Assembly: GCA_951406725.2 (NCBI GenBank)
Contig: OX597814.1
Coordinates: 169,218,001-169,280,000 of the forward strand
Length of the DNA stretch: 62,000 nucleotides
Origin: Octopus vulgaris
Lineage: Eukaryota
Reading direction: 5' to 3'
Shown: piece after piece, positions 38,069 through 46,884 of the stretch
Layout: each line of letters begins with the position of its first letter
Numbering within the stretch: the first letter of the stretch is position 1
Position numbers and translations under genes: made by a program
The notes under the pieces: generated by a model
What the model was told of the DNA's origin: nothing
Databases searched by the model: none
The model's input: only the letters and a program-made list of their open reading frames with translations

Positions 38069-38699
38069 ATATATTTGTATCATCATCATCATCATCGTTT
38101 ATAGATATATATGTGTATGTATATGTGTATAAATTTGTGTGTGTATATGTGTATACATTTGTGTCTGTATGTATATGTGTACACGTTTGTGTATGTGTGT
38201 GTGTATATATATGTATAAATATACAAACACACACGCACACACACATATATATGTTTGTGTATGTGTCTACATGTGTGTGTGTCTGCGTGTGTATGTATAC
38301 ACACACACACACACTTACACGAGGGCTTCAGGTCCTAGACCAGCTGATGCATTGTGTTCAGCTCACGTTGCTTTGCAATTACTTTTGACGTGTGACATAT
38401 CGTATACTGTGCACCTGGTCAGGTAACATAGAATTGATGGAGGGAGTGAATTCCATCAAATACACTGCACATGTAAGTCAAGGAACCAGCTTTATTGCAC
38501 GTTGTGTTAAATTAAATCTGTGCATAATATTGAGTATCACATTCAGTACAAACATTTTATCACTATAAACAAAATTGTTTGTGTAGTTTGTTCAGCAAGA
38601 AATTGTAGAATCATATGTCTTGGATCACTAGAAACTCTAGTACTTATGCATAATATATTCTATATATATCCTAGATTTGTGTGTGTGTATATGTATATT

Positions 38700-44150: not shown

Positions 44151-45469
44151 ATTCAATCTGACACTCGGGTCCAATTAAACAACAGACGAAAAGCATTAAA
44201 ATTTCCCCCTTTCATGTTGCAATGTTTTTTTTTTATTCACATATCAGTTTTTATACCTATGCACATGCTGATCACACACACGCATACGCACACACACACA
44301 CACAAACACACACACACAGCACACACACACATGTATACATGCTCATGCATTCATGCATATATATATATATATATATATAAAACAATCTAAGACTTAGGGA
44401 GATACCTCAGTAAAAGAGAAGAAAATTGATTTTCACAGAGGAGTTTTTCTCACCGAAGCAAGAGTTGTATGTAAAGTGCATATGGTAGTCTGTGTAACGG
44501 AAGCACAATTATCTGTGACTGAAGAGAAAATTATCGTTTTATAAGCCAGACTGACATACAGTAAGGACTAGATGGAATAAGGGTGGGAGTCATTGTTTTA
44601 CTATAGATATTTGTAAGTATAATGGATATTTAAGCTCAACATGTTGAAGAAATTGAGAGAAAGAAGAAGGGGAAATATAGAGGAGGGAGATAGAGATAGA
44701 GATAGAGAGAGAGACAGACAGAGATAGAGGAAAAGGAAAAGGAAAGATCTATGGTTGTTTTGTACAAGAACCATGTCAAAGAGGAAGCGGGAGAGAAGAG
44801 TAAAGTGAGAGCGAGGGAGAGGGAGGAGAGATGGAGAGTCAGACAAAAGGAAGTCAAGATTAAAGCTTTCAGTGTTTTTATTATACTTTGAAAATTTGAT
44901 ATCAGTATTAAGATAAATAAATAATTCCTGTTGAGATTATGGCATCAATGAAGTAAAACTAAATAAAACAAGATTACGAGACATGAAAGAACACACAAAC
45001 ACACACACGTGTGCATGTGCGCACATATGCACAATAATCACACTTAAGTTTAGAAGGTAATTACAGCACATTTCTTGTATATTTTTCTAAAAGTAACAAT
45101 GTTTATTTTCCAGTTGCTTCTTTCAAGTAAACAAATGAGCAGTGGGATAGCTAGACTGTGTGCCTCTCAGAGCAGCACTTGAGTATTTTCCCTACCCACA
45201 ACTGTGCCAATATAGCCTATACAGGCTTAGACAGCAGGCCTAAAAGTATTGCTTGAGGTGAAAGACCTTTGCTCCACAACTATATATAAGCCTTACAGGA
45301 GTGGCTGTGTGGTAAGTAGTTTGCTTACTAACCACATGGTTCTGAGTTCAGTTCCACTGTGTGGCATGGTGGGTAAGTGTCTTCTACTATAGCCTTGGGC
45401 TCTGTGAGTGGATTTGGTATATAGAAACTGAAAGAAGCCCGTAATATATATATATATATACATATATAT

Positions 45470-45650
45470 ATACCAGAGTAAGCACATAAATGCAAAACAA
45501 GGTGGAAAAAATGAAACTGGAATACCAGAGGTAGAGTAATATGCTTTATTGAAAAGCACCAGAAATATTACAAAAACTGTTACTCAGAGTTTCATGTTCC
45601 CGTTCGTCAGACAGTTTATCTCTCTCTCTATCTCTCTCTCTCTCCTCTAC
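45470..45650 (-). mobile_element. Penelope-like pseudo-LTR fragment
   Basis: On the minus strand a hammerhead is followed by AATAAA and an AT-rich tail ending in the (TA)n of a family A SINE head (45296-45445). Confidence 0.65.
45575..45616 (-). ncRNA. Minimal type I hammerhead ribozyme motif
   Basis: aactgt CTGACGA acg ggaa cat GAA ACTC t GAGT A acagtt. Stem I is 6 bp, the core is canonical and the triplet is GUA. Confidence 0.78.
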
Positions 45651-45683
45651 ATTTCCCCTCTTCTTTCTCTCTATTTCTTCAAC

Positions 45684-45888
45684 ATATTTGGTACTACCTC
45701 CGAGATCTGCACCCGCAGTTGGCTTCACCTGGGCTCGTGCTCGCAGCTTGCATGCACGCCACGGTGCCCTCCTACTTGACCGGGCATCGGAAAGTCGCCT
45801 TGCCAGCGATCGCGCAACCTGTTGCCTGGCCGGTCCGGCATCGGTTGCTCGCTCCAGCGCCATCCACTTTCGTGGCCAGTCGATTCGG
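45684..45888 (-). rRNA. Isolated 28S (LSU) rRNA fragment, about 205 bp (dispersed pseudogene copy)
   Basis: The minus strand has CCGAATCGACTGGCC.CGAAAGTGGATGGCGCTGGAGCG, AGTAGGAGGGC and GGTGCAGATCTCGGAGGTAGTACCAAATAT. These match conserved eukaryotic LSU blocks in order; the segment is a GC/CpG-rich island in AT-rich DNA. Confidence 0.9.
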
Positions 45889-46884
45889 TACACTGCACAT
45901 GTAGTTCAAGAAATAAACTTTAGTGCACATTGTGTCAAATTAAATCTGCTTGAATATCATGAAGGGCTATGTGGTTAAGAAACTTGTGGCTTTGTGGTTA
46001 AGACACCAGTATGGCCACAGTCTAATGACTGAAACAAGTAAAAGATGAAAATAGAAAAATTAAACCGGATACAAGATTCATCATGTGTGTGTGTGGGGGG
46101 GTGTAATTTCAGTCATTTTAATCTTCTTTCATTCTTCTTCTTCTTCTTCTTCTTCTTCTTCTCCTCCTCCTTCTTCTTCTTCTCCTCCTCCTCCTTCCCC
46201 TTCCCCTTTTCTTCTTCTTCTTCTTCTTCTTCTTCTTCTTCTTCCCCTTCCCCCTTTTCTTCTTCTTCTCCCTTTTCTCCCTTTTCTCCTCCTCCTCCTT
46301 CTCCCTTTCTTCTTCTTCTTCTTCTTCTTCTTCTTCTTCTTCTTCTCCTCCGCCTCCTCCTCCTCCTCCTCCTCCTCATTCTTCTTCTTTTTCTTCCTCC
46401 TCCTCCTCCTCCTCTCCCCCTCCCCTCCCTCCCCCTTCCCCTCCCCTCCCCTCCCCCTGCCCCTCCCCCTGCCCCTGCCCCTCCCCCCTTCTTCTTCTTC
46501 TTCTTCTTCTTCTTCTTCTTCTTCTTCTTCTTCTTCCTCCTCCTCTTCCTTTGAATTTGCTGCAGAAAGTTGGTCTATGTTTGTGGTGATGGGGAATGGT
46601 GGTGGTGGTGGTGGTAGGGAGTGCTAGGAGTGCTCAAAGCCATTACCAGCTCTTCATGACTGATGAGGTTCATGCAGGTAATGTTTAACTCGAACATCTA
46701 TAAATTGATGATGCCTGCAGGAAAGAAATATGTGAACGAAGAAAAGGAATCCAGGGGAAAACTCTTTTAGATGTGGGGAGGTCTAAGTGTCAGGAGGATG
46801 TTGTGAGGATGTGACAGGAAGACGAAAGACAGATGGAGCTAGTGGTGCACGACTTTCTACTTCAGGAGAATAGTAAGTTTTATA

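What the first reader, a model, noticed from the sequence alone, without database searches (positions are those of the whole stretch)
45470..45888. 28S rRNA fragment joined upstream of a hammerhead pseudo-LTR on the same strand
Seen on the minus strand, 5' to 3': about 205 nt of LSU rRNA, a ~65-nt purine-rich linker, the hammerhead, AATAAA, then a tail ending in (TA)n. No other rDNA is nearby. Established: RTs can template-switch onto abundant RNAs, and rRNA-derived SINEs exist. Inference: a Penelope-like RT jumped onto 28S rRNA, or this is a member of an rRNA-headed, ribozyme-processed retroelement family.
Basis: partly seen in the sequence, partly recalled or inferred. Interest (0 to 1): 0.75.

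Follow-up and report, generated by a model that had tools for sequence, protein, structure and literature searches.

The report
One-off 28S rRNA–retroelement chimeric insertion
A 205-base piece of the animal's own 28S ribosomal RNA sits, together with two short copies of nearby DNA, at the front end of a truncated Penelope-like retroelement copy; it is a single old patchwork insertion, not a new element family, and is one of several rRNA–retroelement fusions in this genome.

Summary
On the minus strand there is a 28S fragment (45888..45684, 90% identical to the genome's own rDNA), a purine-rich stretch of about 66 nt, a hammerhead-like motif, AATAAA and a (TA)n end.

The junction is unique in the 2.8-Gb genome, so the "rRNA-headed family" idea is refuted. 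It is not an assembly artefact, because contigs from other public runs, including two other labelled organisms, carry the same junctions.

New points:
- The linker is a 90% copy, inverted, of window 44638-44708.
- The 68 nt upstream of the rRNA are a copy of window 38461-38526, so the locus is a four-piece mosaic.
- The element is the last 145 nt of an abundant family at least 1.7 kb long. The family has Penelope-like hallmarks: 5' truncation, head-to-head inverted copies, (TA)n ends and a tail extension.
- The family's master sequence reads CCGACGA, not CUGACGA. The window's canonical core is a CpG decay product, and Rfam finds no hammerhead.
- Three other 28S fragments elsewhere are fused sense-to-sense to SINE 5' ends. 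Two of them end at an apparent hidden-break 3' end of 28S.

Best reading: reverse-transcriptase template jumping at the 5' end of one retro-insertion. It is a known kind of event with a new partner. Interest is modest.

The parts
45889..45956 (-). Patch 1: 68-nt copy, in the same orientation, of window 38461-38526. It ends exactly where the rRNA begins.
   Evidence: The only other match in the whole genome is the site 7.4 kb away, at 85%. Local alignment score is 43 against a shuffle maximum of 24.
45684..45888 (-). 28S rRNA fragment, in sense orientation, matching rDNA reference (L003, oriented) positions 1501-1705.
   Evidence: Rfam LSU hit. 90.2% identity to the rDNA. Of 20 differences, 14 are CpG-type transitions; non-CpG divergence is about 4.4%.
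45618..45688 (-). It overlaps the rRNA end by the 5-nt microhomology AATAT/AACAT.
   Evidence: 90% identity over 71 nt. It is the best and only match genome-wide for the non-repetitive left half.
45473..45617 (-). 5'-truncated 3' end (145 nt) of an abundant Penelope-like family. It contains the hammerhead-like motif at 45617..45574, AATAAA at 45550..45545 and a tail extension at 45538..45473.
   Evidence: 4482 first-look candidates, with copies 90-93% identical. The family extends at least 1.5 kb upstream in other copies. Only the last 174 nt occur in the window.
45444..45472 (.). (TA)n shared by the minus-strand element and the plus-strand SINE.
   Evidence: Family copies and SINE copies both run into (TA)n.
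45300..45443 (+). SINE copy lying tail to tail with the element. It is a neighbour, not part of the chimera.
   Evidence: Many 75-85% identical copies in the window.
44638..44708 (+). Probable template of patch 3, at the start of a purine-rich tract of about 220 nt.
38461..38526 (-). Probable template of patch 1.

Best explanation
This is the fossil of one complex retro-insertion.

A short RNA of a Penelope-like, (TA)n-targeting retroelement was reverse transcribed from a nick in a (TA)n tract. The RNA was the last ~150 nt of the element, including its hammerhead-like motif.

When the enzyme reached, or nearly reached, the 5' end of that RNA, the growing cDNA did not join the chromosome at once. 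It jumped templates in series:
1. about 70 nt of nearby sequence, 1 kb away and inverted;
2. 205 nt of 28S rRNA, entered through a 5-nt AATAT overlap and copied as antisense cDNA;
3. 68 nt of sequence 7.4 kb away.

It was then ligated to the upstream target end.

The result has no function and has decayed neutrally since, by about 4-6% at non-CpG sites.

Shown: the four-piece anatomy, its uniqueness, its presence in independent read sets, the comparable ages of the parts, and the recurrence of 28S-retroelement fusions in this genome. Inferred: that all junctions arose in one event, that a reverse transcriptase rather than a repair polymerase made them, and that the rRNA template was RNA.
For: - **Coincident boundaries.** Patch 1 ends at 45889 and the rRNA starts at 45888. 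The rRNA and patch 3 overlap at 45684-45688. Patch 3 ends where the element starts, at 45617/45618. Four independent events with coincident ends are unlikely.
- **Orientation.** The rRNA is in the same sense as the element.
- **Similar ages.** rRNA non-CpG divergence is 4.4%. The element differs from the family majority at 11 of 139 sites. Patch 3 is 10% and patch 1 is 15% pairwise from their templates, which is about half that per copy.
- **Preferred 5' end.** The element starts within 8 nt of a preferred 5' end of the family. Many copies end, or meet an inverted partner, 4-12 nt upstream of the motif. That is where end-to-end template jumping is expected.
- **Recurrence.** L019, L021 and L033 are 28S pieces fused sense-to-sense, with 6-32 nt spacers, to full-length SINE 5' ends. 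L033 shares the window's rRNA 3' end (reference 1705/1706). L019 and L021 end at one discrete rRNA 3' end, and L023 skips 30 nt of the loop there, which shows an RNA origin.
- **Precedent.** 28S/LINE-1 chimeras with a median 28S segment of 269 nt, 83% in sense orientation, are described in primates (bioRxiv 10.1101/2025.02.02.635956).
- **Not an artefact.** A 388-nt contig of run X4 spans 45579-45966. Contigs of organism B span both rRNA junctions.
Against: - The two local patches come from opposite strands of nearby DNA. This is easier for a DNA-templated repair polymerase than for an RT copying RNA.
- No target-site duplication can be read, because the target is (TA)n.
- The direction of copying between the linker and 44638-44708 is not proven.
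- No Penelope-type RT was linked to this family.
- No empty or intermediate orthologous site was seen, so a single event is inferred, not shown.
Confidence: 0.6

Rival explanations
1. Later break repair. A longer or similar element copy was already there. A later double-strand break or deletion at its 5' side was repaired by end joining with templated filler. The filler was two patches copied from nearby DNA by a repair polymerase, plus a captured rRNA-derived cDNA or rDNA piece.
For: The local patches lie within 1 and 7.4 kb, in both orientations, with short microhomology (AATAT) at one junction. This is typical of templated insertions at breaks (for example PMC11724301). No upstream element sequence lies beyond the mosaic, which is compatible with a deletion.
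Against: The element starts at the family's preferred 5' end, not at a random internal point. The rRNA is sense-oriented with the element. The same genome holds three clean 28S-SINE fusions at SINE 5' ends, which points to RT jumping. The ages of the parts are not distinguishable.
Confidence: 0.22
2. Independent neighbours. An rRNA retro-pseudogene with a purine-rich tail inserted first. The Penelope-like copy and the SINE landed beside it later, and the two local similarities are unrelated small duplications.
For: L033 shows a 28S piece ending at the same rRNA position, followed by an A10/GA-rich stretch. A purine-rich tail after this rRNA end therefore has a parallel. The genome is very repeat-rich.
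Against: This needs four events whose ends coincide to the base. The left half of the linker has its only genome-wide match 1 kb away. In L033 the tail is itself followed at once by a SINE 5' end, so that locus too is a chimera.
Confidence: 0.12
3. Member of an rRNA-headed, ribozyme-processed retroelement family.
For: None beyond the single locus. rRNA-derived SINEs exist in other animals (cited).
Against: Searches with 45470-45900 and 45590-45720 find no other locus joining these parts among 4482 and 45 candidates. Other family copies have different upstream sequence.
Confidence: 0.01
4. Assembly artefact: a chimeric join of an rDNA read and a repeat.
For: The locus is flanked by repeats and a microsatellite.
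Against: A run X4 contig of 388 nt (13 differences) spans all three junctions. A run X1 contig (0 differences) and contigs of organism B (6-7 differences) span the rRNA junctions. The rRNA piece is 10% diverged from the rDNA.
Confidence: 0.01

Closest known systems
28S rRNA/LINE-1 and U6/LINE-1 chimeric insertions of mammals (template switching or RNA ligation during target-primed reverse transcription)
   Same: A fragment of an abundant non-coding RNA lies sense-to-sense upstream of a retroelement's 3' part. The 28S segment is of a few hundred nt (205 nt here; median 269 nt in primates). These are single-copy events, not families.
   Different: The partner is a Penelope-like, (TA)n-tailed element, not LINE-1. 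The junction is not direct: a 66-nt inverted copy of nearby DNA lies between the parts and a further 68-nt local patch lies upstream. No target-site duplication is readable. The host is an invertebrate-type genome.
Pseudo-LTR / 3' terminal region of Penelope-like elements with hammerhead motifs (Cervera & de la Pena 2014, PMC4209133; Craig et al. 2021, PMC8557442; Frangieh et al. 2024, PMC11167929)
   Same: High 5' truncation, head-to-head inverted 5'-truncated copies, (TA)n at the ends, and an optional tail extension present in direct but not in inverted arms. A type-I hammerhead-shaped motif with a short palindromic helix III lies near the 3' end.
   Different: No RT/GIY-YIG ORF was linked to this family here. 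The master copy has C instead of the invariant U at core position 4 (376 against 58 genome matches). Rfam models do not match.
Templated (filler) insertions at double-strand breaks / microhomology-mediated template switching
   Same: Short patches are copied from nearby sequence in direct and inverted orientation, with microhomology at a junction.
   Different: The patches are longer (68-70 nt) than most reported foldback insertions (about 5-34 bp). They sit exactly at a retroelement 5' end together with an RNA-derived piece.
rRNA-derived SINEs (5S-derived SINE3, 28S-derived SINE28)
   Same: rRNA sequence at the head of a retroposed unit.
   Different: Those are multi-copy families with a constant junction. 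This junction is unique.

Membership tests
Hammerhead ribozyme, type I | Conserved core CUGANGA ... GAAA with a cleavage triplet NUH | tested here: inconclusive
   The window copy reads CUGACGA ... GAAA ... GUA. The family master reads CCGACGA: 376 against 58 exact genome matches. The CTG share (13%) equals the CpG-decay share at a neighbouring CpG (14%), and CTG copies are more decayed at the other CpGs. The canonical core here is therefore secondary.
Hammerhead ribozyme, type I | Helices I, II and III closing the core | tested here: inconclusive
   Helix I has 7 bp. Helix III has 2 bp with a near-palindromic loop of the dimer type. Helix II (3 bp, GGAA loop) has a C-A mismatch in the window copy from a CpG-to-CpA change at 45595, but is intact in most copies.
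Hammerhead ribozyme, type I | Match to curated covariance models | tested here: not met
   No Rfam hammerhead hit at gathering score or at E<=10, either in the window copy or in copy L024.
Hammerhead ribozyme, type I | Self-cleavage | not testable with these tools
   Needs in vitro transcription of monomer and dimer constructs.
Penelope-like element (terminal repeat region) | ORF with PLE-type RT and GIY-YIG endonuclease belonging to the same element | tested here: inconclusive
   No coding ORF in up to 1.5 kb upstream of family copies. GIY-YIG domains in open frames of 781 aa are abundant in the genome, with 6136 candidates, but none was linked to this family. Further fetching was blocked.
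Penelope-like element (terminal repeat region) | Variable 5' truncation, adjacent inverted 5'-truncated copies, microsatellite (TA)n targets, optional tail | tested here: met
   Inverted arms stop after 79 nt, about 10 nt past AATAAA. Direct arms carry about 65 nt more.
Chimeric retrocopy made by RT template switching | 5' part from an abundant cellular RNA, 3' part a retroelement 3' end, same orientation | tested here: met
Chimeric retrocopy made by RT template switching | Whole chimera flanked by one target-site duplication | tested here: inconclusive
   The 3' side is (TA)n shared with a SINE. No duplication is readable.
Chimeric retrocopy made by RT template switching | Recurrent in the same genome with varying partners and junctions | tested here: met
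   L019, L021 and L033 are 28S pieces joined to SINE 5' ends.
rRNA-headed retroelement family / rRNA-derived SINE | Many copies sharing the same rRNA-to-body junction | tested here: not met
   The junction is unique in 2.8 Gb.

The most novel reading that the evidence does not exclude
The locus records serial, end-to-end template jumping by a Penelope-type reverse transcriptase. The path would be from its own short RNA to local nucleic acid, then to 28S rRNA, then to local nucleic acid again. It would be the first described rRNA chimera of a Penelope-like element. Together with the 28S-SINE fusions, it would show that rRNA capture at retroelement 5' ends is a regular process in this (probably cephalopod) genome.
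Probability: 0.4. Interest if true: 0.5.

Novelty: new member of a known kind. Interest (0 to 1): 0.38.

Why it matters
In itself the locus is a dead, single-copy fossil without function. Its value is as a record of mechanism.

It shows what happened at the unresolved 5' junction of a Penelope-like insertion, a step about which little is known for this class (PMC8557442, PMC11167929). It also shows that rRNA capture by retroelement machinery, so far catalogued for LINE-1 in primates, occurs in an invertebrate-type genome with SINE and Penelope-like partners.

The side observations could be followed up more profitably than the locus itself. These are the genomic fossils that mark a discrete 28S 3' end and a skipped 30-nt loop, and two abundant hammerhead-shaped families with a C at core position 4.

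Tried and rejected
- **Rfam.** Scans at gathering score over the whole window and at E<=10 around the site and on a second family copy found no hammerhead.
- **MFE folding** of the motif region has no signal, z 0.44.
- **Coding partner.** I looked in the flanks of longer copies for the family's coding partner. Only low-complexity ORFs turned up.
- **GIY-YIG search.** It shows many PLE-like ORFs in the genome, but none near the listed motif positions.
- **Swamped search.** A search with the upstream part of copy L028 was swamped by an unrelated young 680-nt repeat.
- **Terminal inverted repeats.** I rejected reading the two 71-nt inverted repeats (44638-44708 / 45619-45688) as the ends of a DNA transposon. 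There are no other copies in the genome and no flanking duplication.
- **R2 co-transcript.** I rejected this origin for the rRNA piece, because the R2 site lies about 1.4 kb further 3' in the 28S.
- **Continuation of the patch 1 paralogue.** I looked downstream of the mosaic for it and found none.
- **Earlier findings.** The search of earlier findings never opened.
- **Organism.** Not identified. Run labels are coded. The repeats look cephalopod-like to me from memory only.

Full report
**Observation.**

The rRNA piece is window 45888..45684. Rfam's eukaryotic LSU model aligns it to model positions up to 1454 at 40.4 bits, E 4.5e-8. It is 90.2% identical over 205 nt, without gaps, to the genome's own rDNA, which forms an array with a period of about 18 kb on contig C20. 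The window is C1:169218001-169280000 of a 2.8-Gb, 227-contig assembly. No other rRNA is in the window.

Downstream come a purine-rich stretch (45683..45618), a hammerhead-shaped motif (45617..45574), AATAAA (45550..45545) and (TA)n (45472..45444). The (TA)n is also the tail of a plus-strand SINE at 45300-45443, whose relatives are numerous in the window. The two elements therefore lie tail to tail.

**Uniqueness and reality of the junction.**

A genome search with 45470-45900 returned rDNA and 28S pseudogene hits confined to the rRNA part, and repeat hits confined to the last 148 nt. No hit spanned both. A search centred on the linker and both junctions (45590-45720) found only the locus itself, one site 1 kb away, and low-complexity matches.

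Contigs from public runs carry the same joins:
- A 388-nt contig of run X4 covers 45579-45966 with 13 differences.
- A contig of X1 covers 45652-45858 with none.
- Two contigs of a differently labelled organism (X2) cover 45652-45836 and 45838-46034 with 7 and 6 differences.
- A third organism's contig (X3) covers 45656-45819.

The mosaic is therefore real. It predates lineages that differ by about 3-4% here.

**The locus is a four-piece mosaic.**

The linker is not anonymous. 45688..45619 is a 90% copy, in inverted orientation, of window 44638-44708, which is the start of a purine-rich tract of about 220 nt. For the non-repetitive left half, this is the only match in the genome.

The 68 nt immediately upstream of the rRNA (45956..45889) are a copy, in the same orientation, of window 38526..38461. 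This is again the only other match in the genome, and the homology stops exactly at the first rRNA base.

The rRNA end and the linker overlap by AATAT/AACAT. The patch 1/rRNA junction is blunt.

**The element.**

Other copies begin with the same motif but continue upstream. Homology among copies runs at least 1.5 kb further, with variable 5' ends. Only the last 174 nt are present anywhere in the window.

Many copies end, or meet a head-to-head inverted partner, 4-12 nt upstream of the motif. The inverted arms stop after 79 nt, about 10 nt past AATAAA, and run into (TA)n. Direct arms carry about 65 nt more before (TA)n.

High 5' truncation, adjacent inverted truncated copies, (TA)n targets and an optional tail are the published hallmarks of Penelope-like elements (PMC8557442; PMC11167929). 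So is a type-I hammerhead with a short palindromic helix III (PMC4209133).

I could not link an RT/GIY-YIG ORF to the family. GIY-YIG domains in 781-aa open frames are abundant in the genome.

**The hammerhead claim needs qualification.**

Exact-pattern counts give 376 copies with CCGACGA against 58 with CTGACGA. The 13% CTG share equals the decay share at a neighbouring CpG, and CTG copies are more decayed at the other CpGs. The master therefore had C at core position 4.

The window's canonical CUGA is a CpG-to-TpG product. Its helix II carries a CpG-to-CpA mismatch. A structural descriptor finds the motif only with one helix II mismatch allowed, and finds no hits in 100 shuffles. Rfam finds nothing.

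The shape is far beyond chance, but activity is doubtful.

**Ages.**

Of the 20 rRNA differences, 14 are CpG-type transitions. Non-CpG divergence is about 4.4%. The element differs from the family majority at 11 of 139 sites. The patches differ from their templates by 10% and 15% pairwise. These values are compatible with one event.

**Context that decides between readings.**

Other small 28S pieces elsewhere are also chimeras:
- L019: rDNA reference 1476-1824, then 6-9 nt, then a SINE 5' end.
- L021: reference 1323-1824, then 16-22 nt, then a tRNA-like SINE 5' end.
- L033: reference 1603-1706, then 29-32 nt of A10/GA-rich sequence, then the same SINE's 5' end.

All three are sense-to-sense. 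L033 shares the window's rRNA 3' end.

L019 and L021 end at one discrete position. L023 reads through it but skips 30 nt of the loop (reference 1827-1856). This is what a cDNA made on a 28S with a hidden break would look like.

These fossils argue that dispersed rRNA pieces here are RNA-derived. They also argue that jumping from a retroelement RNA's 5' end to another template is recurrent.

The closest precedent is the set of 28S/LINE-1 chimeras in primates.

**Verdict.**

This is a real, unique, old chimeric insertion. It was most likely made by serial template jumping at the 5' end of one Penelope-like retro-insertion (0.6). The main rival is later break repair with templated filler (0.22). 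It is not a new element family.

Noticed in passing
genome-wide; examples L024, L028/L053; C4:127188794/127189159/127189524: Two unrelated, abundant hammerhead-shaped families both carry C instead of U at core position 4 (CCGANGA). The window's family has 376 CCGA against 58 CTGA matches. A second family has 223 exact matches, of which 98 of the first 100 listed are CCGA. That second family occurs in tandem pairs and triplets about 365 nt apart and in inverted pairs, like retrozymes or pseudo-LTRs. This is either a natural core variant or disabled relics.
   Followed up: partly
L019 (C20:3599722-3602926), L021 (C6:112943840-112947044), L023 (C21:24138639-24141845): Three dispersed 28S fragments mark one discrete rRNA 3' end (rDNA reference 1824-1826, in the D7a-type loop). 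L023 continues after skipping 30 nt (reference 1827-1856). These look like genomic fossils of a 28S hidden break with an excised gap.
   Followed up: partly
L019, L021, L033 (C13:11210469-11213530): 28S fragments are fused sense-to-sense, with 6-32 nt spacers, to the 5' ends of full-length SINEs of two families. In L033 the spacer starts with A10, which might be an adenylated rRNA fragment.
   Followed up: partly
window fragment, L019, L020, L022: The 5' ends of four independent small 28S fragments fall within 43 nt (rDNA reference 1476-1519). Three 3' ends fall at 1705-1713. This may reflect a preferred RT stop or preferred fragment ends. The sample is small.
   Followed up: no
L002, L013, L017, L018; L015: 28S pieces outside the main array end at the canonical R2 target (…CTCTTAAG) or, in L002, at an internal 28S position. 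They are joined there to the same R2-like 5' end. L015 carries a different element inserted a few bases upstream. Units of the C20 array differ from L003 beyond that site.
   Followed up: no
genome-wide: GIY-YIG endonuclease domains lie in uninterrupted 781-aa frames at many loci (6136 first-look candidates). Penelope-like elements therefore appear numerous and some may be intact.
   Followed up: no
L028 1640-3148 (query 386-1064): A repeat of about 680 nt with copies 96-98% identical to each other and thousands of candidates. It is a young, probably recently active family, and was found inserted into a copy of the Penelope-like family.
   Followed up: no
window 46006-46064: The 3' end of another very abundant repeat. 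In other loci it is followed by an A-rich tail and often directly by the start of the 45300-type SINE (joints and loose ends).
   Followed up: no
run X4 against the window: A run labelled as the same organism as the best holder differs by 3.4% over 388 nt, as much as the runs labelled as other organisms. This could be mislabelling, a cryptic species, or low-depth contig errors.
   Followed up: no
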